Shown here piece after piece: positions 1 to 24,959 of a stretch of 64,000 nt of DNA; position 1 is the stretch's first letter; each line of letters starts with the position of its first letter. The DNA lies in IMG/VR virus record IMGVR_UViG_3300036766_000194, positions 62,001 through 126,000 of that record, one strand, 5' to 3'. The position numbers and the translations under genes are program-made. The notes beneath the pieces are model-generated. The model was not told the DNA's origin and ran no database searches. It saw nothing but the letters and a program-made list of their open reading frames with translations.

Positions 1-912
1 CGTAAGGAGGTAGGTGTAAATCCTCAAAACTGGTATAATTTTAAGAAAGAAAGGAAATTTGGACCAAGAATACCGCTTAGATATTTTCTAACCCATCGTC
101 GTAAATTACCAGCACCGCAAGGTTTATATTTTAGCCAAACTAGAGGCAAGGCTAGAGTGATTGGGAATCTGACTTTGCGGCTTAGTAATTGGGCCTATGT
201 TTTGGGATTCTTTTTAGGGGCTGGTTGGCTTAATAGGGATAGCCGAGGTGTTATTACGAGTGTCAGCTTTTCTGTGGATGCACCTCATTACAAAAAATTG
301 TGCACTGCCTTGGGAGCCATTAAAGAAACACCCCTGCGTATCCGAGAACGCTTCAGCACAGTTGCAATGGTTGAGATTGAGTGCGATAACAAATTCTTCG
401 CAGAAATTTTGGCTTACGTTTTCAAGGGGGCAAAGAAATGTTGGGAAAAAGAACTTCCTACAGAATGGACAACTACTTGGTCCAGGAAAGCTCGTGAACA
501 GCTATTGGAAGGACTTAGAGATTCAGACGGCGTAGCAGCTGGTTCTAATCCAACTACTAGTAGTGCCTATACAACCACTTCTCTGGCTTTAGCAAAATCA
601 ATTCTTCTCTTGCTGAGGAGTCTAGGTATATCGGGGAGTTACAGTGAACACTCTCCGAGTCTTGGGGGGTGGGTTAAGGAAAAGGACGGTTCATTACGTC
701 AGATACAAGGTAAAAGAATTTCCTACATAATTGGGTGGAGTGTTGGAACGGGTCATTGGGGTTCGGCTTTGCCCTATAAATCCCCCGAATTGTGGAATCA
801 AGCCCCAATACATAGGATTAAGGATGTCGTTCCGCCATCACATGTATACGATTTAGAAATGGAAGGTCATCCTTCTTTTTGCCTTGAAGGAATTGGTATG
901 CTAGGAAAAAAT
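1..912 (+). mobile_element. Intein with LAGLIDADG endonuclease (C-terminal part)
   Basis: LLEGLRDSDG LAGLIDADG-type motif; block F VYDLEM; ends GKN followed by +1 Ser of SATP. Confidence 0.8.
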
Positions 913-1917
913 TCCGCGACTCCAATTTACAACTATGGAGGAGAGATGTTTAACGTTCTAGATGTTCTCTATCCAGGTTGCCTAGGAACTTGGGATGAAT
1001 TTAGCCGCGAGTGGGTTGCTTATGCTTTTGGGGATAAACCCAAGATAAAGGATCCTAAAGCGTTTGGTGTTTATACTCGTGAAGCTGGACTCATGCTACG
1101 TCGGACCCGTATAGAGGTACGCCGCGAATTGCCTGAGGTTACGGTCGTCCCACACAGCATTGATTGTGACACGGCCATCCTTGACAAGATGAAGGGCAAG
1201 GCTATTGAGCTTGCCAAACTGATCCTTGCGCAGAAGCAAGATTTTCGTGGGCAAAAGATGCAAGCTGCTGGAGAATTTGATTTGCGTATGCGTCAAGCTA
1301 CAGGTATTGCCAAGGCTCCCTATGTTTGCGAATTTGTAAAATTCTTGATACAAGAGAGTAACGAACCTATTGTATTGTTCGGATGGCACAGGGAAGTTTA
1401 CGAGATCTATCTAGAAAAATTGAAAGAGTTTAATCCTGTGATGTATACAGGGAGTGAGACAGCTGTACAAAAGGAAGAGTCTAAGCAGAAATTTATCAAA
1501 GGTCAGAGTAAGGTTATGATAATCAGCCTCCGCTCTGGGGCGGGGCTGGATGGTTTACAGGATATTTGTCACATCGCGGTATTCGGAGAGTTAGACTGGT
1601 CAAATTCTGTTCATACTCAGTGTGTGGGTCGTATTCATAGAGATGGTCAGGATGAACCTGTCATCGCCTATTATTTGCTGAGTACTGATGGCTGTGATCC
1701 TATTATGTGCGATGTCTTAGGGATCAAACGGCAGCAATCTGAAGGCATATTAAATCCGTTAGGTGAGTTCGTAGGAGAAAACATAATACGGGAGCAGTAT
1801 ATAAGGGACCTAGCCGCCGATTTTTTGACGAAACAGGGAGTTGACGTTGAGAAGATTGAAAAACCCAAAGAAATCTCTGAAACACAAGTTTCCTCAGATA
1901 GCCCAGGAATGGCATGA
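1..1917 (+). CDS. SNF2-family helicase, 5'-truncated by the window edge, with an intein
   Basis: Frame open from nt 1. After the intein come SATP (motif III), IVLFGWH, SLRSGAGLDGLQ and QCVGRIHRDGQ (helicase C-terminal motifs). Confidence 0.9.
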   Translation, partial: RKEVGVNPQNWYNFKKERKFGPRIPLRYFLTHRRKLPAPQGLYFSQTRGKARVIGNLTLRLSNWAYVLGFFLGAGWLNRDSRGVITSVSFSVDAPHYKKLCTALGAIKETPLRIRERFSTVAMVEIECDNKFFAEILAYVFKGAKKCWEKELPTEWTTTWSRKAREQLLEGLRDSDGVAAGSNPTTSSAYTTTSLALAKSILLLLRSLGISGSYSEHSPSLGGWVKEKDGSLRQIQGKRISYIIGWSVGTGHWGSALPYKSPELWNQAPIHRIKDVVPPSHVYDLEMEGHPSFCLEGIGMLGKNSATPIYNYGGEMFNVLDVLYPGCLGTWDEFSREWVAYAFGDKPKIKDPKAFGVYTREAGLMLRRTRIEVRRELPEVTVVPHSIDCDTAILDKMKGKAIELAKLILAQKQDFRGQKMQAAGEFDLRMRQATGIAKAPYVCEFVKFLIQESNEPIVLFGWHREVYEIYLEKLKEFNPVMYTGSETAVQKEESKQKFIKGQSKVMIISLRSGAGLDGLQDICHIAVFGELDWSNSVHTQCVGRIHRDGQDEPVIAYYLLSTDGCDPIMCDVLGIKRQQSEGILNPLGEFVGENIIREQYIRDLAADFLTKQGVDVEKIEKPKEISETQVSSDSPGMA

Positions 1918-6234: not shown

Positions 6235-7872
6235 TCAGGCCCGCCATTTTCCTGCGTAAACAGTAACAATAGTTCTTTTCCCATTAGGATATGAGATTAT
6301 GTGAGAATGAGTCCAACTACTCGGACCATGATTGTAACCCATACGGAGATTGGTAGAAGTACCTGCTACATATAACCCCCCGGTTATTGTAGCACTATGG
6401 GTGTGAGCGGTGTTGGCTTTGCATCCCATCTTAGAAAGATTACTAGGTGTTCCTCTTGCTCCATCGGGACCCAAGTGTCCGTGCATACCGCATTCTACTT
6501 TCTTGTTACATATAGTGAAACTATCATCTCCCAACAAGAACTTTACTCCCTTAGTAGCATTGAAACGTTCCATAGCCCACCGGGTTAGATTGAAATTTTC
6601 ATTACGCCCTTCCAGTTGCTTATACACTTCGAATTGAGCCTCTAAGAATAGTAGAGCATTGCGGGGATCCGTGCGATAGTCGTGCTCACGCAACCAACGC
6701 ATAAACCAGTTATCGTGGTTTGAATCCACCACGACCGTTTCAACACCTGTACGACAATATTCTTTTAAACATTCTGCGGTATCTTTAAGCTCCTGGGTGA
6801 CTGCATCATACCCACGTAAGTAGGCTTTAAATTTCTCGTGAGGATTTTTTGCGTTGTGATGATTTACCGAAACTCCTTCAAGGAGGTCATGAATAAACTG
6901 ATAGCTAGGACGGAGACTATCCAGCATCCCTCCTTCACCAATAGACAGATTCTTTACAGTTGGATCTACAATGGTGGCGTGGATATCTCCCCAGGTGATC
7001 GCTTCAACACGGTTACCTGTGGTTACTTGTTCGTTTTCTACTACAACATCTAGATCTTGAATACGTCCGGTATTTTCGTCTGCTTCTAATTGACGTACCC
7101 ACCAATGACCGTTACTATCTACTTCTACTAGGACTCCTCCATAAGAATGACGATGCTCAGCTTTTAATCCTGCCTTCTTTTGTATGTAGTTACGCTTGGT
7201 GACGGTGCCTGTCGTGTACATTAGCTTTGTACCCCGACCTTGCATAGTAGCAACAGAGTCCATTTCCATCTTAGCATGGGGGAAGATACAAGACTTAGCT
7301 CCCGAATAAGTCGCCATACCCGAAAGAGGATTATTCTCCGTAGGGATAATGTTCATTTCTCCACACCAAACAAGTCCTTCTCCTAATTCTTTCCTACCAT
7401 CGTAAATGTATTTTTCAATAGCATCGTCATACCAGGCTTCTTTTTGTTTAACTTCTTCCGTTCCACGCTTCACAGCTAGAGGACCGTAAGCATTTTTATT
7501 ATAAGAGTAGGTTCCCACCAAAATTTCTGCTTCATAGTATCCAGCAAGAGCTAGAAGATTGTTTAAAACAGCATCGTGAACGAATGTGTTGTTTTGAGCG
7601 GAGGTAAGAATGTATCTTTTAACCGTGCCTAGAGCAGGTAACTTTAATGATTTGTGTACGATACCCCGGATAGTTCCGCCAGCAACTTTACGTGTGATCT
7701 TTCCTACGTGCTTTTTGATATTCCGATATACCGTGGAACGAGACATTCCTAGTTTACGGGCAACTTCGGCAGCGTTCCCGCCCAGTTTGTTATACAATTC
7801 TACTATTTGTTCTCTTTTGGCAAGGACTTCAGGTGGGACGGTAGGTTTCTGGTGCTTTTTGGCTTTACTCAA
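6235..7872 (-). CDS. HTH-fused calcineurin-like metallophosphoesterase
   Basis: N-terminal NAAEVARKLGMSRSTVYR HTH; WGDIH, HD, SNHD, MHGH and AHTH metal-binding motifs. Confidence 0.7.
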   Translation of the reverse strand: MSKAKKHQKPTVPPEVLAKREQIVELYNKLGGNAAEVARKLGMSRSTVYRNIKKHVGKITRKVAGGTIRGIVHKSLKLPALGTVKRYILTSAQNNTFVHDAVLNNLLALAGYYEAEILVGTYSYNKNAYGPLAVKRGTEEVKQKEAWYDDAIEKYIYDGRKELGEGLVWCGEMNIIPTENNPLSGMATYSGAKSCIFPHAKMEMDSVATMQGRGTKLMYTTGTVTKRNYIQKKAGLKAEHRHSYGGVLVEVDSNGHWWVRQLEADENTGRIQDLDVVVENEQVTTGNRVEAITWGDIHATIVDPTVKNLSIGEGGMLDSLRPSYQFIHDLLEGVSVNHHNAKNPHEKFKAYLRGYDAVTQELKDTAECLKEYCRTGVETVVVDSNHDNWFMRWLREHDYRTDPRNALLFLEAQFEVYKQLEGRNENFNLTRWAMERFNATKGVKFLLGDDSFTICNKKVECGMHGHLGPDGARGTPSNLSKMGCKANTAHTHSATITGGLYVAGTSTNLRMGYNHGPSSWTHSHIISYPNGKRTIVTVYAGKWRA

Positions 7873-7975: not shown

Positions 7976-9100
7976 ATGCCAGAAGAGAACAAGACTCGTA
8001 AGCGCATAAACTTTCAAGGAATTCCTATTGCCATAGAGTGGGAAAAGGGTTCCGAACGCAAGGGGGTAAACCCTGATGGTTCTGAATGGTCTAATCCTAT
8101 GTATGCGGATTACGGGTATATTATACCTTCTAAGAACTCTGTTCCTGTCATAGAAGAATTCTTCAAACACTATGAACGTGAAGTGGACTACTACAAAGAA
8201 GCTGCCGACATTGCTAGAGAAAAATTAGAAAATGCTTTACAGGCCGAAGGCATCCGAGCACAAGTAACCTGCCGGGCTAAGTCTCCTAAGCGTTTGCGTA
8301 AAAAATTATATCGTCGCTATCCAGAGAAACACTATAAGACGTTTCGTGACATATATAAGGACATAGTGGACTTAGCGGGAGTTCGCGTCGCTCTATATCT
8401 TCCCGCTGACCGTGATGTTGTAGGACATATTATAGGAACACTATTTGAAGAAACTCGCCCCGTTAAGCATTTCCCTACAGATAAAGGAACAGAAGATAGT
8501 GTGGGGTATATTGCTAATCATTATCTGGTGAGATTATCACCCGATACACTAAAGGGATCTGATCGTCGTTATGCCGAGACTAAAATAGAGATACAAGTGG
8601 CTTCTGTCCTCATGCACGCTTATGCTGAAATCTCACACGACCTCGTTTATAAGCCCGAAAAAGGAGAATTGTCTACTGAAGAAAAACTACTTCTTGAACA
8701 ATTGAATCAAATTGTTTTGGCTGGAGAAGTAGCTCTTACACGATTACAGAGTAAGATTGAAGGTAGGACCGATAAGGATCTCCGTTTTGAACTAGTTGGA
8801 AGTTGTATAAAGAAAGCATCTGGGGTTTTAGCGGCTAACGGTTGGTCCAAAGACGGAGAGAACATGGATGTTTACGTGGGAGATAATTATGAATCTCCTT
8901 ATGTCTATGCCATTGAACAGTTGAGAGATGGGCAATTTGATGAATACAAGTTTCTTTTGGGATTTGATTCTCTGGAGCAAGCTCGTGAAATCTACTTGAA
9001 ACACTTTCCGACTCAACCTAATTGGTGGGAAGAAAATGTAGAGGGGATTTATGAAGTTCCCCTGGAAGAGTTCCGTACTGCCGTGGATAATCATGCCTAA
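7976..9100 (+). CDS. Polyvalent-protein-type inorganic pyrophosphatase (InPase) domain split by an inserted RelA/SpoT synthetase domain
   Basis: InPase N-half IAIEWEKGSERKG..DG.EW...M.ADYGYI; synthetase motifs RAKS..RL.KKL, DLAGVR, GY.A.HY, EIQV, HAYAEISHDLVYK; InPase C-half KDGENMDVYVG...EQ...FDEYKFLLGF.S...A...YL.HF. Confidence 0.85.
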   Translation: MPEENKTRKRINFQGIPIAIEWEKGSERKGVNPDGSEWSNPMYADYGYIIPSKNSVPVIEEFFKHYEREVDYYKEAADIAREKLENALQAEGIRAQVTCRAKSPKRLRKKLYRRYPEKHYKTFRDIYKDIVDLAGVRVALYLPADRDVVGHIIGTLFEETRPVKHFPTDKGTEDSVGYIANHYLVRLSPDTLKGSDRRYAETKIEIQVASVLMHAYAEISHDLVYKPEKGELSTEEKLLLEQLNQIVLAGEVALTRLQSKIEGRTDKDLRFELVGSCIKKASGVLAANGWSKDGENMDVYVGDNYESPYVYAIEQLRDGQFDEYKFLLGFDSLEQAREIYLKHFPTQPNWWEENVEGIYEVPLEEFRTAVDNHA

Positions 9101-12100
9101 TAAATGGAATCATGCTTCTACTCAGATTAACTTACCTCCTGATGTAGCTGAACAGGTACTTACTGCTGGGAAAAATGTTCCTGAAGAAATACTATCTCTC
9201 AATGGACGGGATGATAATCCTCATATAAGTTTAAAATACGGGGTGGAGGAGAATGAAGAACTTCTTCGTGAAGCTGTTAAGGGTATTTTTCCTTTCACAG
9301 TTACACTGGGAAAGACTAAGACTTTCTTAGCTCGTGATCCTTACGCTGGAACTCCCCTAGTTGTAGAAGCAGCTGCTCCTGAACTTGCTAAACTTAACAA
9401 GTTGATTGATAAAGCAATAGGGAATAAGCCTGAAGATTTTTCCTTTGAACCTCATGTCACTCTTGCCTATATAGAAGAGAAACATTCTGCGGAATATGTA
9501 GGAAAAGATTGGCTAGCCGGGGTTACGTTTACGGTAGATTCTATTGTTCTTTCTAAGATGAACGGAGAACAAGTTAGCATTCCTTTAGAGACAAAACCGG
9601 AAGAAGAATTCCGTCGCCACGTACCTACTCACTTCAGTTCTCGTTTACTTACAGCTAAACTGCCTGATGTGGATATGAAGCGTTTCAAACGGATTATTGA
9701 ACCTCTCAGACCGCGTTTAATAGGAAAAGATGATGATGAAATTGCCGAAATCCTTAATGAAACACATGAAGATACCGGAGTGTCATACCATCTAAGTACC
9801 CAAGAATCTGGTCACAGCGAATGGGCGCAGAATTATCTTAGCGGCGCGTTTTACGTTGTGGGTCAAGGTGATATTGTTGTCATGTTAGAATATGGTATAG
9901 GAAATTTATTCGAGAATATCACTGAAGAAAAGTGGGGTTATTTTGTAAGTGTGTTGTCTTCTTTAGTTGTGCACGAAGTCACTCATGACTCTCAATTCGC
10001 AGCTATTTTTCACAAATACAAGGGACAGTCCGAACCTATGGAACGCGCTCTTAAAACTATGGAAAGCGGACCCGAACAAGGTAGGGCTGTTTACTTTTCT
10101 AATCTTCATGAGCTAGCTGCCTTTGCCCGCCAAGCAGTAGAAGAATTACGCGAGACACACTACACGGATGAGGATATTTCCAACTTATTGAGGGACTCTA
10201 AGGTCCAGAAAGACGCTATAGGTGATTCTCATGTATTCTACCTTTATTGGGATTTTTTTGGACCAGGAGATCCCATCTATAAGAAGTTCCTTTATCAGAT
10301 GGCAAAGGTCATAGGAACCACCCATGTAGCTTCGGATGAAAGCGCATATCAAGCTGCTGCGGATAAGTTCCATATTGATTATAAAGGAGTTGCCAAAGAT
10401 TATACGACTCCTAGCAATGCTCTAATTATGTACAACGATCCGGTGAGCGGGACTTCCATTGGGGTGTTCGTAGCAGAATTCAGTGAAGATAAAGTTAAAG
10501 AGCATTTGAACGCTGCTCGTCAACGATTTAATTTACCCAAAGTTTCTGGTGATACTATCTCCACTTCACAATTGGAATGTGGTTGGTGTAAAAAGGTTAT
10601 CCGCGAAGGTACCCAACCAGCCAGTCATACTATTTGTCCCGAGTGTCATAAGAAATATTTCCCAGAGACTCTAAAGAAGACTTCCACAAAAATGTATAGT
10701 GGAGGTCGCCCTGGTAGCGGACCGGGTAAAATTGTGACATATTTTACACCAAATAAACAGATGGCTGAGAGCTATGTTTCTCTGTATAATGATCGTTTTG
10801 GTGGAGGTGGAGAATTGAGGGAGGCGGATGTCAATCTTATTAAACCTGCCCCCTATGAAGTTATTGAAGCTGAAGCTAAGAAATTGGGAATTGATAACAC
10901 CCATTACACACCCGCTAGCATTTTTGATAGGAATCTCCACGGCGAGAAAATGGTAGGTACATTAGTAAAGAATCTAAAGGATCAGGGATATGATGGTACT
11001 ATTCTTGATGACATTGGTTATGGCGTAGAGATTCAGGATAAAGCCTTCATTAAGTTTTCCTATAACAAACTCTCTCCTAACCAACCGGGGAAGAAATACG
11101 TTGAAGAAACAAACGGATGGGCGGATCAGAATGAACAGTCTCGTGAAGGCGATGAGGCTTACCCAGAACTTGAAACCTTAGCTCCAGAATTATTTAAGGA
11201 ATCTGCCGTTACATCTCCTCTCAACGCTGTTCAGAATTCTGTAAATAAATTTATGACAGAATTCTGGCCTGATCTTCCTAAGCCTAAAATCAAGATTATA
11301 AATCACACGGTCCCTGTAAGTTTAGGAAATTGTCTTTGGACTTCTAAAGATCCTGATACTTCGATTATAGAGATAGAAAAAGCTGTATGTGGTCACCAAG
11401 AAACACTGGATCGTATTGTAGCTCATGAACTTTGTCATCACGCAGAATACATAAATGAAATCCGTAAGATTCCTACTGACCAAATCAAGATTATGAATCG
11501 GTTACACGGCGATCATGGAAAATGGTGGAAAGCGGAAGCCGACAAAGTAAACAACATATATGGACAGAGCTATGTTACGGTGAAGTCTGACCAAAGTATG
11601 GTTCAGGAACAAGACAAAGAATTTTATGTTCTCCTTAAATCTAGTCCTTATGGGATTATTTGGTGCTATGCCGTTCGTCCTTCTTTAAAGCAAAAATTAT
11701 ACATAAATCATCAGATTCCTCAGGGAGCTAAACTCGTTAAAACTAAAGACATAAGTCTTGCTAGAAATCCTGGTGGAACTATTGGTAGCGGGTGGAGAAG
11801 ACCGGGTACTAAGGAAATGGCAGAAAAACTTTCTACTCTTTGGAATGAAGTTCCCTCTGTAAAGGTATATTCCTTACATAATCCTCTATTTAAGAACGCC
11901 GCAACTGACGTCATTGGACAAGTTTACCTATTACACTTCAATGAACCTTTCAAGCATGCTAGACACTATCTAGGGTGGGCACTGGACGCGGATAGAAGGA
12001 TAGAGCAGCACCGTAACGGAGTCGGCTCACGACTCACCCAAGTCATAAAAGAGAATGAGATAGGCTTCGAGGTTGCTAGAATCTGGGATAATGCTACCCG

Positions 12101-15100
12101 AGGATTTGAGCGTAATCTGAAGAATCAGGGTGGACTTAATCGTCAATGTCCAGTTTGTAGGGCGTTAGGAATGGACTCCCGTAAAAAATGGAAGGAACGT
12201 CAAGAAGAGATTCAAGTTGCTCCTCCGTCAGGTACCTATGGTCCCGACTATGTTCAAACTAGTAAGACTGCTTGTCTTGCTATGACTAAGAGTGCAGGGG
12301 TTGAACCAAGAATTACAACGCAAAAGAGTAGTGTGGATAATGAAGGACATGTACACTACGAAATTAGCATGGTTGACGAGAACGGGGATGATCTTGGATT
12401 CTTAAAGGTCATCGCCAAACCCAAGGGATCTCCAGGAGGAGATTACGAAGAACCGCATTTGAAGATTCACGAGATTTTTGTAGAAGAACATTCTCGCCGT
12501 AGAGGATATGGCACATTGTTATATCAAGCAGCACGGAATCTGGCACGACAGCTTGGCCTGCCAAATGTTTATTCAGACACTACTATCTCAGATGAAGCTC
12601 GTTTGGTTTGGGAAAATAAACTACCCGCAAAACGTTTTAAAGATAATAGAGGAACACCTATTCGTTACCGTATGAAGGCTTCCTCAAATGAATTCTACCA
12701 CGTCACTCGATATGAAAATGCGGCTAATATCTTGGAGCATAATTATTTCCGAACAACAACGGGACAAAATGTAAGAGGATTGTCTACGACAAAAGATCCT
12801 AACTACTGGTGGGGTAGTAAAGAAGTTCGTTTTGTTTTAGACAAACAAAAGCTGTCTGAAAAATACGAATTAAAAAGTGAAAACGAGACCATCTATACCG
12901 AAGGATCTCTTCTTAATGAAAACGAAGTTGTGGTGTTATTTGATTCTGCTATCTTGAATGCTAGAGATTACATCCTTAGAGTGGACTACTTTGAAGCTCC
13001 AGGGGAGCCAGAGTATGAAGACTTTATTTCACAATTGAAAGATGTAAAGTCTAGAAAAATTGGAAATGCTAAATTTGCTGCTTTGTCTACAGCCGAAAAG
13101 AAAATGGTTGATGATCAGAAACTATCTCAGGAATTCACCAAAAAGATTATTGAAATATTAGAAAACCTTCTTAAGAATTACAAATACACCTATCCTGAGG
13201 ATTGGGATAGACTAATTGTCAAAGAACTCAGGAAGAAATTGAATATTTCGGAACAAATTGCTTGGGATTTGGATGATATATTGACTGTTGCTTCATATCT
13301 GGATATATATTCTTACTTTACTGATAAGGGATTACAACTGGCTGGAATTGATCCCAAACTCGTAAAGAAACCAAAACGAGAAATTGAAGAAAGCAGCATG
13401 GGTGATCTTGAAGAGGAAGATAAGAAACTTTTAAAGATGACTTTTCATTCAGAACTTCTTCCCGTGAAGTATTTGTTGCACGGAACGTCTGACAAATTCA
13501 TAGCTGACATTAGAAAAAACGGATTACATGGTAAGAAAATTTATCTCACCACGACGTCAGAAATTGCTACCTCCGAAGCTGAGTATACTGTTGAGGGAGA
13601 TCCTTTTTCAGAAGGAAAGAATTGGGGTCAAATTTCTGGAGGAAAACCCATAGTAATTGTGATTGACCCTAAGAAGATTAAGTTGTCTCTTCGTCCTGAT
13701 CCTGAATATCTTGCTTCCATGAAGGAAGAGGGAGAGATTCCTTATGCTTTCTATACTCGACAGACTGTTCCTCCTTCTGCCATAATTAAGATTGTTTCTC
13801 TTGAGAATGCTGAAAAATATGGAGTGGACAAGAAACCTCCCACCTTAGAGATGATGAAGACCGCCGCTATAGGCTTAGAACAACTCAAACACGATTTTGA
13901 TAAGCGTCCTGCTCAGTTAGTGACAAAACAGGAAGTTTTAGATACGACATTTATCTTACCCGATGGAACTTCCCTAGGATTCTACGATCATCCAGAACGT
14001 GACCAAATCGTAGACGAGAAGAATATACAATTTAAAGATTTTTGTATCCGCACAGGGACTATCTGGTCTAAACGCAGGGAAGACATCTTTCATATATATA
14101 AGCGTCCTAATGATGCTCAGATGGATAGATTACATAAGATGTTTCAACTCAATGGAAGTCAACTGGGTTGGATTATTAACCGGGGTCCTGCTGCTCAAGA
14201 GATAAAGAAAGTTAAAAAGGGAGTTTGGAATAAATTTCTCCGTGAATTGGATATAGTGTATCAGACTGAGGACCGTAAGAAGAAATCATCTAGTAGTAAT
14301 GATTTTAGTGATTTAGTTGATCTTCATACTCAAATTCATAAACACCCGGCTAGAAGTGAGGACCATACTCCTAGTCATGCCCAATGGAGTAATTATGTTA
14401 AACAGTTAGAAAATTTCTATACTAGATTGAAATTGACAGGGGATGAATACTGTGACTGTAAAGAATTTCCTACAATGGGAATGTTTCGAAAAACTCATCC
14501 TCTGGTTACGGTTAAAAGTAATTTAGATAGATTAACCGATGAAGTAGACCACACCTATTCTGAAACAGCCCTTATGGGAATGCATTCATTTCTAACTCAT
14601 TTACAAGATAAACATAAAGACCGTGAGAAGACCAGCGCGTCCTCTTCATTTGATTCTTGGTTCATAGGTTCCAAAGTTGTAGACGCTCAAGGCAAACCCA
14701 TCATTTGTTATCACGGAACAAGCCAACCCTTTTCTCGAATAAACATGGGCAAAGGTTCGCAAGGAGTTTTCTGGGTCACATCAGATCGTTCCAAGATTGA
14801 GCGCGGCGGGGCTGGAGCCAGTTCCAACAAGCACATTCTAGGAATGTATGTCAACATCAAGAAGCCCGCTGGGTGGGATGAATACGAACGTCTTTCTTTA
14901 GGAGAACTGAAGCGTGACTATGATGGGGTTATTCTCCCCGAGGGAGATCATTTTGATGCCATTGTTTTTAAGCCTAACCAAGTCCGGATGGTAAAATCCG
15001 CTGCTACAGATCCTGATGCTTGGAATGAGGAACCTGAGTCTCTTCCTAAGGGAAAAGTAACAGGAGACATGATTAGAAAAGGTGCTTGGTTTCTACTGCC

Positions 15101-15773
15101 TGACGGTACCTGGTTTGGTGTCAGGGCAAGTGAGGCAGAGCACTCCTGGATAGAACACTTAGTCCCGGAAGGTTCCATACGTGTACCAAATGAAATGGTT
15201 TATGATATTTCTAGAAAACCCACAGAAGACCAGAAGCAGGAGATAGCAAGATTAGTGAATCAATCCTCTAGTTTAGTTATGTATTGGGACATTTATAAAG
15301 ATGGAGGGGAATATTCTGGTCAGGGTTCCTTAGGAGATTTTCTACGTTTCTTGAGTAAGATTTATGGTAAAACAGCCTCCTCATCCGAATTAAAACAGAA
15401 TCTTATGCGGTGGCGGGGTAATATCGCGGCCCGTGCTCAAAAAGTCTATGATGAATGGACCCAAAATGAAGAAGGAATAGATACCGAATATGGTGGTGGC
15501 GGACCCTGTGATGCTATAGCAGAACAGATACAAGATTTACTAGAAAGTCTAGGGGTCAACACGATGAGCGGGGGGCAAGAAGGTGACGATCATGCCTGGA
15601 TTATCGCCTATAATTACAAAACTGGTGAAGCCTGTGGAGTGGACATTCCTCATAGTGTATACGAAACTGGAGGGGGCTACTCCTGGAAGAAGATTCCTAA
15701 CGTAGTTTTCACCCCGAATGATGTAGAGATATGGCCCGTAGACATTAAGGACATAGAATATGAAGATCAGTAA
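9093..15773 (+). CDS. Giant polyvalent protein (~2226 aa): 2H phosphoesterase, zincin peptidases, GIY-YIG, GNAT and several ADP-ribosyltransferase-like domains
   Basis: HISL/HVTL (2H); HEVTH and HELCH (zincin/SprT); VYLLHF..PFKHARHYLG (GIY-YIG); RRRGYGTLLY (GNAT); FYHVT..STT, LLHGT..IYLT and CYHGT..FWVT (ART-like). ATG at 9093 overlaps the upstream stop. Confidence 0.85.
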   Translation: MPNKWNHASTQINLPPDVAEQVLTAGKNVPEEILSLNGRDDNPHISLKYGVEENEELLREAVKGIFPFTVTLGKTKTFLARDPYAGTPLVVEAAAPELAKLNKLIDKAIGNKPEDFSFEPHVTLAYIEEKHSAEYVGKDWLAGVTFTVDSIVLSKMNGEQVSIPLETKPEEEFRRHVPTHFSSRLLTAKLPDVDMKRFKRIIEPLRPRLIGKDDDEIAEILNETHEDTGVSYHLSTQESGHSEWAQNYLSGAFYVVGQGDIVVMLEYGIGNLFENITEEKWGYFVSVLSSLVVHEVTHDSQFAAIFHKYKGQSEPMERALKTMESGPEQGRAVYFSNLHELAAFARQAVEELRETHYTDEDISNLLRDSKVQKDAIGDSHVFYLYWDFFGPGDPIYKKFLYQMAKVIGTTHVASDESAYQAAADKFHIDYKGVAKDYTTPSNALIMYNDPVSGTSIGVFVAEFSEDKVKEHLNAARQRFNLPKVSGDTISTSQLECGWCKKVIREGTQPASHTICPECHKKYFPETLKKTSTKMYSGGRPGSGPGKIVTYFTPNKQMAESYVSLYNDRFGGGGELREADVNLIKPAPYEVIEAEAKKLGIDNTHYTPASIFDRNLHGEKMVGTLVKNLKDQGYDGTILDDIGYGVEIQDKAFIKFSYNKLSPNQPGKKYVEETNGWADQNEQSREGDEAYPELETLAPELFKESAVTSPLNAVQNSVNKFMTEFWPDLPKPKIKIINHTVPVSLGNCLWTSKDPDTSIIEIEKAVCGHQETLDRIVAHELCHHAEYINEIRKIPTDQIKIMNRLHGDHGKWWKAEADKVNNIYGQSYVTVKSDQSMVQEQDKEFYVLLKSSPYGIIWCYAVRPSLKQKLYINHQIPQGAKLVKTKDISLARNPGGTIGSGWRRPGTKEMAEKLSTLWNEVPSVKVYSLHNPLFKNAATDVIGQVYLLHFNEPFKHARHYLGWALDADRRIEQHRNGVGSRLTQVIKENEIGFEVARIWDNATRGFERNLKNQGGLNRQCPVCRALGMDSRKKWKERQEEIQVAPPSGTYGPDYVQTSKTACLAMTKSAGVEPRITTQKSSVDNEGHVHYEISMVDENGDDLGFLKVIAKPKGSPGGDYEEPHLKIHEIFVEEHSRRRGYGTLLYQAARNLARQLGLPNVYSDTTISDEARLVWENKLPAKRFKDNRGTPIRYRMKASSNEFYHVTRYENAANILEHNYFRTTTGQNVRGLSTTKDPNYWWGSKEVRFVLDKQKLSEKYELKSENETIYTEGSLLNENEVVVLFDSAILNARDYILRVDYFEAPGEPEYEDFISQLKDVKSRKIGNAKFAALSTAEKKMVDDQKLSQEFTKKIIEILENLLKNYKYTYPEDWDRLIVKELRKKLNISEQIAWDLDDILTVASYLDIYSYFTDKGLQLAGIDPKLVKKPKREIEESSMGDLEEEDKKLLKMTFHSELLPVKYLLHGTSDKFIADIRKNGLHGKKIYLTTTSEIATSEAEYTVEGDPFSEGKNWGQISGGKPIVIVIDPKKIKLSLRPDPEYLASMKEEGEIPYAFYTRQTVPPSAIIKIVSLENAEKYGVDKKPPTLEMMKTAAIGLEQLKHDFDKRPAQLVTKQEVLDTTFILPDGTSLGFYDHPERDQIVDEKNIQFKDFCIRTGTIWSKRREDIFHIYKRPNDAQMDRLHKMFQLNGSQLGWIINRGPAAQEIKKVKKGVWNKFLRELDIVYQTEDRKKKSSSSNDFSDLVDLHTQIHKHPARSEDHTPSHAQWSNYVKQLENFYTRLKLTGDEYCDCKEFPTMGMFRKTHPLVTVKSNLDRLTDEVDHTYSETALMGMHSFLTHLQDKHKDREKTSASSSFDSWFIGSKVVDAQGKPIICYHGTSQPFSRINMGKGSQGVFWVTSDRSKIERGGAGASSNKHILGMYVNIKKPAGWDEYERLSLGELKRDYDGVILPEGDHFDAIVFKPNQVRMVKSAATDPDAWNEEPESLPKGKVTGDMIRKGAWFLLPDGTWFGVRASEAEHSWIEHLVPEGSIRVPNEMVYDISRKPTEDQKQEIARLVNQSSSLVMYWDIYKDGGEYSGQGSLGDFLRFLSKIYGKTASSSELKQNLMRWRGNIAARAQKVYDEWTQNEEGIDTEYGGGGPCDAIAEQIQDLLESLGVNTMSGGQEGDDHAWIIAYNYKTGEACGVDIPHSVYETGGGYSWKKIPNVVFTPNDVEIWPVDIKDIEYEDQ

Positions 15774-19854: not shown

Positions 19855-20133
19855 TTATTCTGTCTCTCGGTGATTAGGATAATTGGGATAGCGATTCTTC
19901 AGGGCCCAAACGTACATCCAGCCAGCAACACATCCAATAGACAGATGAGCTAGACCCATTTTCAAATAGTGTTGGAGTTCTTCTGTCTCCATAGGACCTT
20001 CATTAGTCATGATGAAGAGTAAATTTAAGAATCCAGACAGCAGGCAGAATACAGACAAACTTAGAGTAATAAATCGTTGGATTTGAAAATTGAGAACGTC
20101 AACAACGGATTTGAACCTCTTCCATCTACTCAT
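19855..20133 (-). CDS. Small membrane protein
   Basis: Two hydrophobic segments; overlaps the upstream stop. Confidence 0.55.
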   Translation of the reverse strand: MSRWKRFKSVVDVLNFQIQRFITLSLSVFCLLSGFLNLLFIMTNEGPMETEELQHYLKMGLAHLSIGCVAGWMYVWALKNRYPNYPNHRETE

Positions 20134-21151
20134 CCCAATGATTCCATTCTATGCGACTACGCATCCAATGTCCGTGCGTTTGTACGTGATCTTTTCGAAC
20201 ATACTTGCCCACTCGGGTAGAAAATTCTTTTAAGTGAAATGACCCCGCAGGCCGCACAACGTAACCTTCCCACTTGTCAGAATTGAGGGAATATTGTTCT
20301 AGTATTTCGGGTGAAAAGTCTTCCCATTTCTTTCCATACCATCTTACCGGAACGGTTTGTAGACCGAGGAGTCCCGCATAATCTACTGTATCTTTCCAAG
20401 GGAGACAAGTCAAACCGTCCCAAATACTGAATACAAGAAAGAACGAAGGCAAATTCGAATAATATATGCTATGTTTGGCGGTAAGATTTTCACCACAAAT
20501 ACGCCAATTATTAGGAATGTCATGAGCAATACTAGCATGTAATGCTTTGACACGATCTCTTGATGAGTGCGCTTCATAATCCAGAGACCGAGCATGCATA
20601 TAGTCCCTGTACATGGTGGTATTTTCACCGTCCATTTTTTCGGTGACAACTACTTCGGTACCATTCCAGGTGTCTAAGATTTCTTCAGACAATTCTCGGT
20701 CGTCTTCCTTCATTCCGGGGGACCAAGGAAAATGCCAAGTACGAGGATATTTTACACGATTAAGAAACAAATGTCGTACAGGTTCAAGAACTTTCTGCAC
20801 AGATTCATCGTCATAAAGTTCTCCCTTCAAGCGTAAGCCATTTGTTAAGACAGGGTTGCCCCACTTGTCATAGGGCTGGTCCGGATAAAGATGTGGGGGT
20901 AGAATGGTGTTTTTAATTCCAGCTACGGCGCGAATTTCATCGGTTGCTAAGTCTGTTGCTTCAGCTGCTAGATGACATTTGCCACAGAGAGTTGCTCCGT
21001 TTTCAGAGTAATATCCCCCATCAGGGAATAGTCTACGTTCCATAATATGATGAGCATCTTGCCCCGGCTGGCCGCAAACCACACATTTGTGATTATCCCT
21101 CGCGAAGACTCCTTCGCGGAACTGATCACGTGTTAGGAGGCCTAATCCCAT
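20126..21151 (-). CDS. HNH nuclease-RNA ligase fusion
   Basis: RD.HKCVVC...AHHI....NGATLC..CH (HNH); KYPRT.H.PWSPG, TEKMDGEN (motif I), GEN and EGYVVR (ligase). Confidence 0.85.
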   Translation of the reverse strand: MGLGLLTRDQFREGVFARDNHKCVVCGQPGQDAHHIMERRLFPDGGYYSENGATLCGKCHLAAEATDLATDEIRAVAGIKNTILPPHLYPDQPYDKWGNPVLTNGLRLKGELYDDESVQKVLEPVRHLFLNRVKYPRTWHFPWSPGMKEDDRELSEEILDTWNGTEVVVTEKMDGENTTMYRDYMHARSLDYEAHSSRDRVKALHASIAHDIPNNWRICGENLTAKHSIYYSNLPSFFLVFSIWDGLTCLPWKDTVDYAGLLGLQTVPVRWYGKKWEDFSPEILEQYSLNSDKWEGYVVRPAGSFHLKEFSTRVGKYVRKDHVQTHGHWMRSRIEWNHWDE

Positions 21152-21378
21152 ACCTTTACATACTCTGCTATCTTGTCGTCTTTGTGCGGGTCGTCCTGGT
21201 CAATAAACATCTGGCAACTACACAAGTTAAAATCAAATTCGCACTCTTGAAAAACTGTAGAACTTTCTAGGTATTTTCTTGTTTCTTCGGGCCAAACCAG
21301 ACTGGCATGATGATTCCAATTTGTGTGACCACAAACACAAACCTTACTGTACACCTGCTTCGTTTCCAAAGTTTTCAT
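21142..21378 (-). CDS. Cys/His-rich hypothetical protein
   Basis: CVCGH..WNH..C..C.C pattern. Confidence 0.6.
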   Translation of the reverse strand: MKTLETKQVYSKVCVCGHTNWNHHASLVWPEETRKYLESSTVFQECEFDFNLCSCQMFIDQDDPHKDDKIAEYVKVWD

Positions 21379-21495
21379 GAGTTATATACCCGTCAGGCCA
21401 CACAATAGAAAGAGGAATTTTCATCTTCCGTGTGTAGCGAATTGTCGTCCATGTACCGCTGCGTAACTCTTCACTAATACCTGCCGGGGCAGAGA

Positions 21496-21861
21496 TCATA
21501 CGTGTTGCTGAATTGACAATATCTTTATCTCTTTTGTGGTAGAGAGAATGGTAAATTTTTGGGGAACGAGTTTGTTAATAAAGTCAACATATTCTAAGGG
21601 AGCCTCAGCATTCAGATAAGGACGAGGCTTACAGAAGAAACGATTACGAGTATTTGTAGGCGGGTGTACCACTGTGTTAAAACCCAACATCCACGCGGTC
21701 TCATTTATTTGAGCAGCACCTACACAATCTCCATGATGGAATTCTCCTCTATCAAAAGCGTTAAAAGAAGACTCCAATATGTCTTGTAATAGTCTACGCA
21801 CGGAGATTTTTGTTCTGGGGTCATTCCTATCAACTCTTAATTTTAAGGAATAATTTCTCAT
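21496..21861 (-). pseudogene. Decayed DprA/Smf-like Rossmann-fold phage gene (EFHHGDCVGA family)
   Basis: Recognisable HHGDCVGA..HPP..PYL, but the expected GMTPEQ lies in another frame (5-T run at 21807-21811) and expected downstream segments are missing. Confidence 0.5.
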
Positions 21862-22661
21862 TTCATATCTCTGTTAATAACGAGTTGGTCCGCTGTGCAC
21901 GAAGTAGCCTTTTTATCGTCACGTTTTCGCAACATAACAGGTTGGACAATGTGAAGATTTTTAGTTGAATAAAGGTATTGTACTTCCACAACATCACCCG
22001 GACGCACTCTTGTTCTTCCAATAAGACTTACACCACTCACCCGGTGTAACCTATCCCTATTGAATACTCCAATTTCAACACTGTTTTTCCCTTCCGCAGA
22101 AGGTCCAATAACTACAAAGTCGGCAGACTTCCAAAATTTCCACTTATAGTGCTGTCCCGCCCGTCCTTCCTTGTATACAGCATACTTATTCTTGAAGACG
22201 ACTCCCTCGGCATTTTCCGCATGTAGCTTTTTAATGAGGGCAAGTTTTTCCTTATAGGTCCATGCAGTCTTGAGAACATTGACCATAGGATGAAAATTAC
22301 CGAATTCCTCATGAAGACGTTCTTCGCGGTAGCGGTATTCTTCCGGTGCCAGAGCTTCATTGTTAAGGATAAGGGCGTCAAACCCGCTGTAAAAGGGGGA
22401 AAGTACGGTTCCTTCCAATTCACCATCAATGACAAAACGAGGGAGAGGATGATTCAAAAGAACAGAGACTAATTTACGAGGAAGATCTCTTTTTTCGCCT
22501 TCACGGTTGAAACAGAATACAGAACTTTTTTCGCGAACGATTACACGCCGCTTTCCATTACGTTTTTCCTGCGCTCCAAAACTACCATTACCCAACAATT
22601 TAGTGGCGACTTCATTCAGAGTCACCGCCGTTAAAAGTTCCGCTTTGAATTGAAAGTCCAT
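21858..22661 (-). CDS. Compact ATP-dependent DNA ligase
   Basis: QEKRNGKR (motif I), IDGEL, FDAL, EGVVFK and KWKF, followed by an OB-fold. Start placed at MDFQ; an in-frame GTG at 22751 is also possible. Confidence 0.8.
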   Translation of the reverse strand: MDFQFKAELLTAVTLNEVATKLLGNGSFGAQEKRNGKRRVIVREKSSVFCFNREGEKRDLPRKLVSVLLNHPLPRFVIDGELEGTVLSPFYSGFDALILNNEALAPEEYRYREERLHEEFGNFHPMVNVLKTAWTYKEKLALIKKLHAENAEGVVFKNKYAVYKEGRAGQHYKWKFWKSADFVVIGPSAEGKNSVEIGVFNRDRLHRVSGVSLIGRTRVRPGDVVEVQYLYSTKNLHIVQPVMLRKRDDKKATSCTADQLVINRDMK

Positions 22662-22832
22662 AAAAAGTGTTAGAGATTCGGGCCACAACGGGGCAGCTTC
22701 AATCTCTATGAATATTCTACTTGATAGGACCAGAAAAAGGTTAGCGATCACGTTTGACGATAAAGCCTAATAGGAATGCCCAGATTACGACGATGCCAGT
22801 TCCTATTTTCGCCACATGTTACATGGCGGGAA

Positions 22833-23099
22833 TTAAATTCTTGATAAGATTATATCTAGTAATTTTTCTTCATTCCATCGGATAAGAACAGCCGTGTCAC
22901 TGAAGTCGGGAATGAAGTCCTGTTGAACAACTCCGTCACCCAAGGAAGTGAATTTGTCATAGAGAGTGAGATGACGTTTGACCATGATGCGTCTGATAAG
23001 TTCCCTACGACGCTCCAGATTGCTAGGAGACAGAAGAAACTTGTATTCTCGTACCTTGTCACCGTCAACAAGTCGGCGGTAGTAAACAGGAACTTTCAT
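22833..23099 (-). CDS. Hypothetical protein
   Basis: GGAGGAGG RBS before ATG at 23099. Confidence 0.65.
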   Translation of the reverse strand: MKVPVYYRRLVDGDKVREYKFLLSPSNLERRRELIRRIMVKRHLTLYDKFTSLGDGVVQQDFIPDFSDTAVLIRWNEEKLLDIILSRI

Positions 23100-23125
23100 T
23101 GTGCTTCCTCCTCCACAAGTAGTGA

Positions 23126-24007: not shown

Positions 24008-24010
24008 AAC

Positions 24011-24761: not shown

Positions 24762-24870
24762 ACTACTCCTGGTCCGAGTTTCAAATTCCAAAAGTTTAAT
24801 CGTCGCTCCAGCTTCGTAACGAGAAACGATTCATGATTTGATACTTCATTTTTCCTCCCTACATCTGCCT

Positions 24871-24910
24871 ATAAAAGAGGGAGGGGTCAAGGACTGAGCC
24901 TTGACCCCCT
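24871..24910 (-). terminator. Rho-independent terminator downstream of ku
   Basis: Stem GGGGTCAAGG-loop-CCTTGACCCC followed by CTTTTAT on the minus strand. Confidence 0.7.
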
Positions 24911-24959
24911 GGTGGCGCTGGTAGGGGTCTTGGAGGAACGCTACGCGCCACCAAACTTG

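What the first reader, a model, noticed from the sequence alone, without database searches (positions are those of the whole stretch)
9093..15773. Recurring K-x-[AS]-[AS] motif at domain boundaries suggests a protease-processed effector polyprotein
Seen: module junctions repeatedly read PKVSG (~10538), LKKTST (~10671), LFKESA (~11190), LFKNAA (~11887), SKTAC..TKSAG (~12261-12298), MKASS (~12672), AKFAA (~13068), MKTAA (~13853), KKKSSS (~14278), EKTSAS (~14625), VKSAA (~14990) and GKTASS (~15366). Some are preceded by a F/H-x-S/N/E-x-L-L/F element (FSSRLLTA, HNPLFKNAA, PELFKESA, FHSELL). IKKAS also sits at the synthetase/InPase junction of the upstream gene. Known: prohead proteases of large phages (T4 gp21, phiKZ gp175) cleave inner-head proteins at short motifs. 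Inference: each domain is released after K-x-A cleavage, so new domains can be added as cassettes to an injected cargo protein.
Basis: partly seen in the sequence, partly recalled or inferred. Interest (0 to 1): 0.75.

Follow-up and report, generated by a model that had tools for sequence, protein, structure and literature searches.

The report
Protease-site junctions in phage cargo polyprotein
A 2,240-residue multi-enzyme "polyvalent" protein of a 300-kb soil jumbo phage has its enzyme modules joined by a short Lys-x-Ala/Ser-Ala/Ser motif, and the same motif flanks the phage's own head-maturation protease, so the protein is probably cut into a dozen separate cargo enzymes inside the capsid.

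Summary
All quoted motifs are at the stated coordinates in one intact ORF (window 9051/9093-15773). K-x-[AS]-[AS] occurs 10 times against 2.9 expected (0/500 shuffles). It is order-specific, is encoded by different codons at each site, and sits at module borders defined by homology and by AlphaFold.

The ORF is a "polyvalent protein" in the sense of Iyer et al. 2017. It carries 2H phosphoesterase, two HExxH peptidase-like modules, GNAT, ART-PolyVal and several unknown modules.

The genome is a 299,875-bp phage with direct terminal repeats, related to Tunturiibacter phage Tunturi_5. It encodes a probable head-maturation protease about 130 kb away. In 118 of 120 members of that protease family, K-x-A-[AS] sites flank the conserved core. 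The motif is also conserved in the scaffold-like and DNA-ejection proteins.

Polyvalent proteins are motif-enriched in all eight related phages examined that carry this capsid or protease type, and in only 8 of 65 large polyvalent proteins sampled at large. Several enriched ones have no HExxH.

Best reading (about 0.55): the head protease cuts the polyprotein at its junctions in the prohead. Neither cleavage nor packaging has been tested. I rate this a new variant of a known kind.

The parts
9051..15773 (+). Polyvalent protein ORF, 2240 aa from the first ATG. The source's gene call starts at nt 9093 (2226 aa), overlapping the upstream stop by 8 nt.
   Evidence: Pfam 2_5_RNA_ligase2, SprT-like, Acetyltransf_1, ART-PolyVal
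9132..9566 (+). Module 1: 2H / LigT-like phosphoesterase (aa 28-172). The homology block ends at about aa 183 with no strict motif after it.
   Evidence: PF13563 E 7.5e-9
9636..10538 (+). Module 2: HExxH (HEVTH at aa 308) zincin-like region, aa 196-496. No Pfam hit.
   Evidence: homology block with P0004
10539..10550 (+). Loose site KVSG (aa 497)
10542..10670 (+). CxxC...CxxC zinc ribbon (aa 498-540)
   Evidence: weak zinc-ribbon hits
10677..10688 (+). Loose site KTST (aa 543). An HSP with P0005 starts exactly here, on that protein's KTAS.
10677..11195 (+). Module: weak ART-PolyVal-like (aa 543-715)
   Evidence: PF18760 E 2e-4, below cut-off
11196..11207 (+). Site KESA (aa 716)
   Evidence: HSP with P0004 starts on K in both proteins
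11196..11891 (+). Module: SprT-like Zn peptidase (HELCH at aa 792), aa 716-947
   Evidence: PF10263 E 3.8e-5, 24.0 bits, just below the 25.6-bit cut-off
11892..11903 (+). Site KNAA (aa 948)
   Evidence: border cluster of 7 HSP ends at 945
11892..12263 (+). Module: GIY-YIG-like nuclease plus CPVC finger (aa 948-1071); weak
   Evidence: PF01541 E 0.077
12264..12299 (+). Tandem loose sites KTAC (aa 1072) and KSAG (aa 1080). Both are conserved in P0003 as KVAC and KAAA.
12288..12674 (+). Module: GNAT acetyltransferase (aa 1080-1208)
   Evidence: PF00583 E 4.9e-7
12675..12686 (+). Site KASS (aa 1209)
12675..13070 (+). Module of unknown function (aa 1209-1340). It occurs elsewhere as stand-alone 140-163 aa proteins.
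13071..13082 (+). Site KFAA (aa 1341)
13071..13856 (+). Module(s) aa 1341-1602: helical part plus a weak RNA 2'-phosphotransferase-like stretch (1467-1508)
   Evidence: phrog_5470 E 0.0079
13857..13868 (+). Site KTAA (aa 1603). It is conserved as KTAS in P0003, with a variable linker before it and a conserved domain starting right after it.
13857..14279 (+). Module of unknown function (aa 1603-1743)
14280..14294 (+). Site KKSSS (aa 1744-1748)
14283..14627 (+). Helical module of unknown function (aa 1745-1859)
14628..14639 (+). Site KTSA (aa 1860): pLDDT<50 coil between a helix and the ART core
14628..14993 (+). Module: ART-PolyVal ADP-ribosyltransferase (aa 1860-1981)
   Evidence: PF18760 E 5.3e-15; pLDDT about 97
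14994..15005 (+). Site KSAA (aa 1982), directly after the last ART strand
14994..15368 (+). Module of unknown function (aa 1982-2106)
15369..15380 (+). Site KTAS (aa 2107)
15369..15770 (+). C-terminal module of unknown function (aa 2107-2240). It occurs elsewhere as stand-alone proteins of about 140 aa.
7976..9100 (+). Upstream gene: a RelA/SpoT-type nucleotidyltransferase stretch lying between two InPase-related stretches, 374 aa. KKAS at aa 279 (nt 8810-8821) lies between the two parts. Its stop overlaps the polyvalent start (ATGCCTAA).

Best explanation
The ORF encodes a polyvalent effector protein: about 13 autonomous enzyme or binding modules strung on one chain.

The short K-x-[A/S]-[A/S] strings between modules (family consensus K-T-A-A/S) are recognition sites of the phage's own head-maturation serine protease. 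That protease is P0025 at genome 204948-205817, minus strand, outside the window.

Proposed sequence of events, all inferred. The polyprotein is made as one chain and incorporated into the prohead. When the protease is activated it trims its own N- and C-terminal extensions, digests the scaffold-like protein, trims the ejection protein, and cuts the polyprotein at its 10-13 junctions. The resulting 12-30 kDa enzymes are then small enough to leave through the tail with the DNA. They include a 2H phosphoesterase, Zn peptidases, a GNAT, ADP-ribosyltransferases, a nuclease-like module and several unknowns.

Because only a four-residue junction is needed, modules can be added, lost or swapped as cassettes.

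Shown: the motif, its statistics, its position at module borders, the existence of the protease gene, and the motif's conservation in head proteins and across the lineage.
Inferred: cleavage, which bond is cut, packaging and injection.
For: (1) The motif is non-random and order-specific: 10 sites against 2.9 expected, 0/500 shuffles; permuted and R/E controls are flat; codons differ between sites.

(2) It lies at module borders. Homology-block ends give p about 0.003-0.005. HSP start/end pile-ups fall on sites 1860, 1982 and 2107. In the AlphaFold model, sites 1860 and 1982 bracket the high-confidence ART core in low-confidence coil. The modules 1209-1340, 1860-1981 and 2107-2240 exist elsewhere as stand-alone proteins (140-163 aa for the first and last, from about 157 aa for the ART module).

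(3) A probable head protease exists.
- Position in a sheath / ejection protein / structural protein / protease / scaffold-like / MCP gene order shared with Tunturi_5.
- 59.6% identity to Tunturi_5 gp331, annotated 'head maturation protease', and about 32% to Erwinia jumbo-phage 'head maturation protease'.
- Atlas feature neighbours Peptidase_S78, S77 and S80.
- Best viral fold hit is phage G gp19, which a preprint lists as a head maturation protease.

(4) In 118 of 120 members of this protease family, K-x-A-[AS] sites sit in otherwise variable segments on both sides of the conserved core: KTAS/KTAA at about residues 25-45 and F-A-K-x-A-S at about 265-270. C-terminal self-cleavage is described as a conserved feature of prohead proteases (PMC5694885).

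(5) Sites are positionally conserved in the scaffold-like protein (K-N-A-x; P-K-S-A-A/K-T-A-A) and in the ejection protein (L-P-x-K-[LF]-[AS]-[AS]-E-M; K-K-S-S near the C-terminus). Tunturi_5 gp328 has 11 sites in 827 aa.

(6) The enrichment is lineage-linked. Large polyvalent proteins are enriched in all eight related phages with this MCP or protease type that I examined (G000, G002, G003, G006, G008, G009, G011 and the P0160 contig). Only 8 of 65 large polyvalent representatives at large are enriched, and the distribution is bimodal. Two contigs without the protease (83-88% complete) show no enrichment.

(7) Seven enriched polyvalent proteins have no HExxH at all (P0003, P0005, P0012, P0146, P0175, P0180 and the G003 protein), so a protease acting in trans is needed.
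Against: There is no direct evidence of cleavage, packaging or injection. No virion proteomics exist for this phage or for Tunturi_5.

The gene lies in a nucleic-acid-metabolism region about 130 kb from the head genes, and no N-terminal capsid-targeting propeptide is evident.

The protease assignment rests on weak or indirect evidence. Pfam S78_2 scores 13.9 bits against a 24-bit cut-off. The AlphaFold model is poor, with mean pLDDT 57.5. There is no PDB match by fold or by profile.

The 2H/module-2 border at about aa 183 has no strict site.

Two non-structural proteins are also enriched: a DnaB-like helicase (5 sites against 0.5 expected) and a helicase-like protein of 1369 aa.

A hoped-for co-variation between lineages with FAMTAS protease ends and K-less junctions is not clean. 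G003 fits it, but G008 does not.
Confidence: 0.55

Rival explanations
1. Self-processing by the embedded zincin-type peptidase modules (HEVTH at aa 308, SprT-like HELCH at aa 792), before packaging or after injection. This is what Iyer et al. 2017 proposed for polyvalent proteins in general. On this reading the junction motif is the zincin's site, not the head protease's.
For: Two HExxH modules are present in P0001. The proposal is published (PMC5512222). P1 DdrB is reported there as processed before packaging.
Against: The same motif is conserved at both ends of the head protease and in the scaffold-like and ejection proteins, none of which has HExxH. Seven motif-enriched polyvalent proteins lack HExxH entirely. 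Most polyvalent proteins at large, many of which carry zincins, are not enriched.
Confidence: 0.12
2. The motif is functional but not a cleavage site. It could be a conserved linker or domain-capping element, or a docking motif that tethers cargo and head proteins to a common partner such as the scaffold, portal or protease exosite. The protein would then stay full-length.
For: Phage N4 virion RNA polymerase and some plasmid polyvalent proteins are transferred unprocessed (PMC5512222). The sites sit at linker starts, where a capping role is conceivable. No cleavage data exist.
Against: Linker composition alone does not explain the order-specific enrichment. A four-residue small-residue motif repeated 10-25 times per chain, and also placed just outside the catalytic core of a protease at both ends, is the typical signature of cleavage sites. 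Stand-alone versions of the same domains lack the motif.
Confidence: 0.2
3. Cleavage by a host or other phage protease, unrelated to head assembly, acting in the cytoplasm.
For: The gene lies outside the late structural cluster in this genome. Two non-virion-type proteins are also enriched.
Against: Enrichment follows the phage lineage that carries this head protease, and sites are conserved at the protease's own termini. In Tunturi_5 and on the P0160 contig, the polyvalent gene lies within or next to the structural genes.
Confidence: 0.08
4. Chance or compositional artefact of Lys/Ala/Ser-rich linkers.
For: Linkers are somewhat enriched in P, S, K and G.
Against: 0/500 shuffles reach the observed count, permuted orders and R/E controls are flat, and KTAA occurs 14 times against 0.43 expected in close homologues.
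Confidence: 0.03

Closest known systems
Polyvalent proteins of phages and conjugative elements (Iyer, Burroughs, Anand, de Souza, Aravind 2017, PMC5512222)
   Same: A single giant polypeptide combining many unrelated effector domains (ART-PolyVal, GNAT, 2H, zincin-like peptidases), with an InPase-containing neighbour gene. It is phage-encoded and predicted to be delivered with the DNA.
   Different: That work proposes processing mainly by embedded zincin peptidases and describes no inter-domain motif; the word 'linker' does not occur in the text. Here a defined four-residue junction matches the head protease's own flanking sites and is confined to one phage lineage.
Prohead-protease processing of internal and ejection proteins in T4 (gp21), phiKZ (gp175) and SPN3US (gp245)
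   Same: A head protease recognises a short motif shared by its own terminus and by many head proteins, with multiple motif copies per substrate (PMC5694885, PMC10052503).
   Different: In those phages the motif ends in Glu (L/I-x-E, S/A/G-x-E, A-x-E), and nearly all the cuts remove N-terminal propeptides. Here the motif is K-x-A/S-A/S and lies between a dozen functional modules, so it would release products rather than remove propeptides.
Herpesvirus assemblin cleavage sites ((V/L)-x-A|S). This comparison is from my own knowledge and was not tested here.
   Same: Small residues Ala|Ser at the cut. Phage head proteases of the HK97/T4 type are held to share the assemblin fold (cited in PMC5512222, refs 55-56).
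   Different: The scissile bond here is unknown. A Lys three residues upstream is preferred. Membership of the protease in the assemblin clan is only weakly supported.
Viral polyproteins of RNA viruses
   Same: One translation product is cut at short junction motifs into many functional proteins.
   Different: This is a dsDNA tailed phage. The polyprotein is accessory cargo rather than the replication or structural set, and the likely protease is encoded separately, far away in the genome.

Membership tests
Polyvalent proteins (Iyer et al. 2017) | Several (2-15) unrelated effector/enzymatic domains in one polypeptide | tested here: met
   Pfam 2H, SprT-like, GNAT and ART-PolyVal, plus weak ART and GIY-YIG hits, in one 2240-aa ORF
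Polyvalent proteins (Iyer et al. 2017) | Encoded by a phage, prophage or conjugative element | tested here: met
   299,875-bp virus record with direct terminal repeats that also encodes MCP, portal, terminase and sheath
Polyvalent proteins (Iyer et al. 2017) | Signature domains of the class (ART-PolyVal, zincin MPTase, InPase nearby) | tested here: met
   PF18760 at 56.9 bits against a 31.2-bit cut-off; two HExxH modules; InPase in the overlapping upstream gene
Polyvalent proteins (Iyer et al. 2017) | Packaged in the virion and delivered into the host | not testable with these tools
   No proteomics available; the Tunturi_5 paper has none
Substrates of a head-maturation protease (T4 / phiKZ / SPN3US type) | The phage encodes a head-maturation protease | tested here: met
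   P0025: synteny, 59.6% identity to Tunturi_5 gp331 'head maturation protease', Atlas neighbours S78/S77/S80, BFVD hit to phage G gp19. Pfam itself is below the cut-off.
Substrates of a head-maturation protease (T4 / phiKZ / SPN3US type) | The substrate motif equals the motif at the protease's own self-cleavage sites and in other head proteins | tested here: met
   K-x-A-[AS] flanks the core in 118/120 family members and is conserved in the scaffold-like and ejection proteins
Substrates of a head-maturation protease (T4 / phiKZ / SPN3US type) | N-terminal capsid-targeting propeptide | tested here: inconclusive
   The 2H domain starts by about residue 20. There is no obvious propeptide, and no shared segment with other proteins of the genome.
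Substrates of a head-maturation protease (T4 / phiKZ / SPN3US type) | Cleavage products observed in virions | not testable with these tools
   Needs mass spectrometry of particles
HK97/XkdF-type prohead serine protease, Peptidase_S78 (for P0025) | Match to the family profile above the curated threshold | tested here: not met
   PF14550 at 13.9 bits against 24 (E 0.056); PF04586 has no match in the genome; no PDB relative by profile
HK97/XkdF-type prohead serine protease, Peptidase_S78 (for P0025) | Assemblin-like fold with a catalytic His/Ser pair | tested here: inconclusive
   The AlphaFold model has pLDDT 57.5; the PDB fold search gave nothing; BFVD hits are to phage G gp19 and, at low rank, to prohead proteases. 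Invariant His and Ser residues exist but were not assigned.

The most novel reading that the evidence does not exclude
A whole clade of soil jumbo and megaphages uses beads-on-a-string cargo polyproteins. These phages have MCPs 78-100% identical, contigs up to 463 kb, and a cultured relative, Tunturi_5 on Acidobacteriota. Their polyproteins reach 5,484 aa with 25 or more junction sites. The head-maturation protease would dice them inside the prohead into a dozen or more separate anti-host enzymes. The four-residue K-T-A-A/S code would then be a universal plug-in junction that lets any stand-alone effector gene be recruited as injected cargo without evolving its own packaging signal. The small-residue specificity echoes herpesvirus assemblin.
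Probability: 0.45. Interest if true: 0.8.

Novelty: new variant of a known kind. Interest (0 to 1): 0.7.

Why it matters
Polyvalent proteins are widespread, but how a protein of more than 250 kDa with many domains gets through a phage tail, and whether it acts as one chain or many, is an open question. The published proposal is self-processing by embedded zincins.

A defined junction code shared with the head protease gives exact, testable cleavage positions. It explains how modules can be shuffled as cassettes. It would extend the head protease's role from removing propeptides to releasing a set of cargo enzymes.

It also supplies a practical annotation rule. In this lineage, the K-T-A-A/S strings delimit domains of unknown function, at least six of them in this protein alone. 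A cultured model, Tunturi_5, is available for testing.

Tried and rejected
- Megablast of the ORF against GenBank phages gave no match.
- Genome searches for PF04586 (Peptidase_S78) and PF05065 (HK97 capsid) were negative. The MCP and protease were found by PHROG/Pfam scans of candidate ORFs instead.
- I first guessed that the minus-strand genes at window 17-30 kb were a head module. They are RNA/DNA ligases, a Ku-like protein and RIIA/RIIB.
- The AlphaFold model of the protease was poor (pLDDT 57.5). The PDB fold search and the PDB profile search were uninformative.
- Alignment A2, which mixed fragments of two domain families, was misaligned by MAFFT and was not used for folding. A3, with ART fragments only, was used instead.
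- Co-variation between K-less protease ends (FAMTAS) and K-less junctions fits G003 but not G008, so I do not claim it.
- The site at residue 80 of the 203-aa protein next to the MCP is not conserved, so it is probably chance. The p455 site has I/V at the fourth position in orthologues.
- The MCP N-terminus is invariant in 80 relatives, so it says nothing either way.
- The search for related loci for two non-enriched polyvalent proteins (P0150, P0178) found nothing in IMG/VR, and P0145 was too long for the tool. The negative side of the lineage test is therefore thin.
- No paralogues or internal repeats of P0001 exist in the genome.
- Complex prediction was not run. With a low-confidence protease model and short peptide substrates, a pass was unlikely and a failure would have been uninformative.

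Full report
**What is there**

The window is bases 62001-126000 of a 299,875-bp virus record with direct terminal repeats. The finding lies in one uninterrupted + strand ORF at window 9051-15773, 2240 codons. The source's own gene call starts at residue 15 (nt 9093, 2226 aa), where the ATG overlaps the upstream stop by 8 nt.

Pfam finds these domains:

| Domain | Residues |
|---|---|
| 2H / LigT phosphoesterase | 28-172 |
| SprT-like Zn peptidase (24.0 bits, just below the 25.6-bit cut-off) | 733-844 |
| GNAT | 1108-1181 |
| ART-PolyVal | 1878-1943 |

Scanning the segments separately adds a weak second ART-PolyVal (543-715), a weak GIY-YIG (948-1079) and a zinc ribbon. There are two HExxH motifs, at residues 308 and 792.

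This is a "polyvalent protein" in the sense of Iyer et al. 2017 (PMC5512222). The overlapping upstream gene combines a RelA/SpoT-type nucleotidyltransferase with an InPase domain, another polyvalent-protein module.

**Checking the observation**

Positions agree with the stated coordinates to within about 13 nt; only TKSAG is off by more than 2 nt.

- Count: strict K-x-[AS]-[AS] occurs 10 times without overlap, against 2.9 in shuffles (0/500) and 3.5 at the rate of the rest of the proteome.
- Controls: R-x-[AS][AS] and E-x-[AS][AS] are not enriched. Nine order-permuted versions of the same residues give ratios of 0-1.4, against 4.0 for the real order. This rules out plain Lys/Ala/Ser-rich linkers.
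- Codons differ from site to site, so the selection acts on the protein, not on a DNA repeat.
Positions -6 to -1 over 119 sites in related proteins show only mild P/L/K/S excess.

**Are the sites at module borders?**

Against 22 domain-shuffled homologues, 6 of 10 sites lie within 8 residues of a homology-block border (random mean 2.0, p about 0.005). The best-supported border clusters (945, 1864, 1986, 2114) all sit on sites. Several HSPs begin on the K in both query and subject, for example 716/1696 with P0004 and 2107/503 with P0003.

An exhaustive search of 1.84 billion representatives gave 195 HSPs. Their starts and ends pile up at 1855-1869, 1975-1989 and 2105-2114. That search also showed that modules 1209-1340, 1860-1981 and 2107-2240 exist elsewhere as stand-alone proteins (140-163 aa for the first and last, from about 157 aa for the ART module), without the motif.

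An AlphaFold model of residues 1740-2110 has an ART core at pLDDT about 97. Site 1860-1863 is exactly a pLDDT<50 coil between the preceding helix and the core. Site 1982-1985 directly follows the last strand.

Pairwise alignments with P0003 show the motif conserved (KTAA/KTAS; the tandem KTAC...KSAG against KVAC...KAAA) between a variable linker and the start of the next conserved domain.

**Who would cut?**

The head genes are about 130 kb away, on the minus strand. These coordinates are in the genome, not the window.

| Gene | Genome coordinates | Evidence |
|---|---|---|
| MCP | 199947-200924 | phrog_2522 |
| Acidic scaffold-like protein | 203439-204845 | |
| 289-aa protein P0025 | 204948-205817 | see below |
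| 881-aa protein | 208742-211387 | |
| Tail sheath | 211886-215941 | |
| Portal | 166133-168562 | |
| Large terminase | 175426-178422 | |

P0025 has only a sub-threshold Pfam XkdF/S78_2 hit. Other evidence is stronger:

- Its protein-language-model neighbours are Peptidase_S78, S77 and S80 clusters.
- Its best viral fold match is phage G gp19, which is listed as a head maturation protease (bioRxiv 10.1101/2024.12.16.628780).
- It is 59.6% identical to gp331 'head maturation protease' of the cultured Tunturiibacter phage Tunturi_5, and about 32% identical to 'head maturation protease' of Erwinia jumbo phages.
- Tunturi_5 has the same gene order, and it names the 881-aa homologue 'DNA ejection protein'.

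I therefore treat P0025 as the probable head protease. Its fold was not confirmed.

**The motif in head proteins**

In 34 orthologues from related loci, and in 118 of 120 members of the 633-protein family, K-x-A-[AS] sites sit in otherwise variable segments on both sides of the conserved core. These are KTAS/KTAA, often followed by KIAA, at about residues 25-45, and F-A-K-x-A-S at about 265-270. C-terminal self-cleavage is described as a conserved feature of prohead proteases (PMC5694885).

- The scaffold-like protein keeps K-N-A-x and P-K-S-A-A/K-T-A-A sites at two positions.
- The ejection protein keeps L-P-x-K-[LF]-[AS]-[AS]-E-M, and K-K-S-S near its C-terminus. It is very site-rich: 8 sites here, and 11 in 827 aa in Tunturi_5.
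- The MCP has KTAG and KLAA at residues 18-28, but this N-arm is invariant in 80 relatives, so it is uninformative.

Of 52 proteins of 400 aa or more, 8 are enriched at p <= 0.025. They are the polyvalent protein, the ejection protein, the portal, three large unknown proteins in the structural half of the genome, and, unexpectedly, two helicase-like proteins (one DnaB-like). Only the polyvalent protein has HExxH.

**Link to the lineage**

The MCP has 162 relatives in IMG/VR, of which the best 80 (78-100% identical) were kept, on contigs up to 463 kb. Large polyvalent proteins from every such phage examined are enriched for K-x-[AS][AS] and/or x-T-A-[AS]:

| Phage / contig | Observed vs expected |
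|---|---|
| G002 | 12 vs 4.3 |
| G003 (mostly without the K) | 16 vs 4.8 |
| G006 | 11 vs 5.2 and 11 vs 2.9 |
| G008 | 8 vs 3.4 |
| G009 (5,484 aa) | 15 vs 7.8 and 14 vs 3.4 |
| G011 | 12 vs 5.0 |
| P0160 (same contig as an MCP locus) | 24 vs 6.3 |

- Tunturi_5 gp321, a 1362-aa SprT-containing protein inside the structural module, has 6 sites against 2.25 expected.
- Among 65 large polyvalent representatives from all sources, only 8 are enriched, and the distribution is bimodal.
- Distant homologues P0008 and P0013-P0024 are not enriched.
- Two contigs lacking the protease family (83-88% complete) show none, although their proteins are small.
- Seven enriched polyvalent proteins have no HExxH. 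This argues against obligatory self-processing by an embedded zincin.

**Interpretation**

The simplest account is that the K-x-A/S-A/S strings are sites of the head-maturation protease, and that the polyprotein is cut at its junctions inside the prohead. This would release about a dozen small enzymes as ejectable cargo. The motif, its position and its distribution are shown. Cleavage, the scissile bond, packaging and injection are inferred.

From my own knowledge, not tested here, small residues at the cut recall herpesvirus assemblin ((V/L)-x-A|S) rather than the Glu-directed sites of T4, phiKZ and SPN3US.

Points against:
- The gene lies among nucleic-acid-metabolism genes in this genome.
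- No capsid-targeting propeptide is evident.
- The first module border, at about residue 183, has no strict site.
- Two helicase-like proteins are enriched.
- No proteomics exist.

**Novelty**

Polyvalent proteins and protease-processed internal head proteins are each known. In the searchable literature I found no description of a junction motif in polyvalent proteins, and none of their processing by the head protease. I rate this a new variant of a known kind. It has exact, testable predictions and a cultured model phage for testing them.

Noticed in passing
genome G000 288384-289874 (+), outside the window (L011:8384-9874): A DnaB-like replicative helicase carries 5 K-x-[AS][AS] sites against 0.5 expected (0/400 shuffles). 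The 1369-aa helicase-like protein at window 38454-42563 has 5 against 1.3. Neither is an expected head protein, and I have no explanation.
   Followed up: partly
window 7976-9100 (+): The upstream gene has a RelA/SpoT-type nucleotidyltransferase stretch lying between two InPase-related stretches, with KKAS at the junction. Its stop overlaps the polyvalent start by 8 nt (ATGCCTAA). It looks like a detached, or translationally coupled, further module of the polyprotein.
   Followed up: partly
window 6235-7872 (-): A homologue of the T5 A1-type 'DNA transfer protein' (phrog_1745, E 1e-176) with an N-terminal HTH lies directly upstream on the opposite strand. It has more than 1100 relatives in GenBank phages.
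   Followed up: partly
window 20126-35660: A dense nucleic-acid repair and end-joining set: an HNH-associated RNA ligase-like protein, an ATP-dependent DNA ligase-like protein, a Ku-like protein, RIIB and RIIA, polynucleotide kinase, and an Rnl-type RNA ligase. This fits the RNA-repair flavour of the polyprotein's 2H module and its weak 2'-phosphotransferase-like module.
   Followed up: no
window 157-1917, 33300-35660, 38454-42563; genome 175426-178422: Several large enzymes (helicases, an RNA ligase, the large terminase) carry LAGLIDADG or other endonuclease-like inserts, or mixed PHROG hits. This suggests inteins or homing-endonuclease insertions.
   Followed up: no
window 56072-56147 and 63598-63873: tRNA-Met, and a cluster of tRNA-Tyr, tRNA-Leu(CAG) and tRNA-Leu(CAA).
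   Followed up: no
L113+L114 (G009:C1 about 112810-129264), L119:3850-16356: Related phages encode even larger polyvalent proteins (5,484 aa and 4,168 aa) with 24-29 junction-type sites. On the P0160 contig this gene lies about 10 kb from the MCP.
   Followed up: partly
L111:3906-12854 (-) (G003, 332-kb phage): In this relative the junction motif is mostly x-T-A-A without the Lys (16 against 4.8 expected), and its protease C-terminal site reads F-A-M-T-A-S. This hints at a lineage-specific shift in specificity, but G008, which has the same protease site, still uses Lys.
   Followed up: partly
genome 180776-184606, 185100-186728, 191799-195893 (-), outside the window (L005): Three large proteins of unknown function in the structural half of the genome are also motif-enriched. 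One has a BRCT domain, and two have weak zinc-ribbon or treble-clef hits. They may be further processed internal head proteins.
   Followed up: partly
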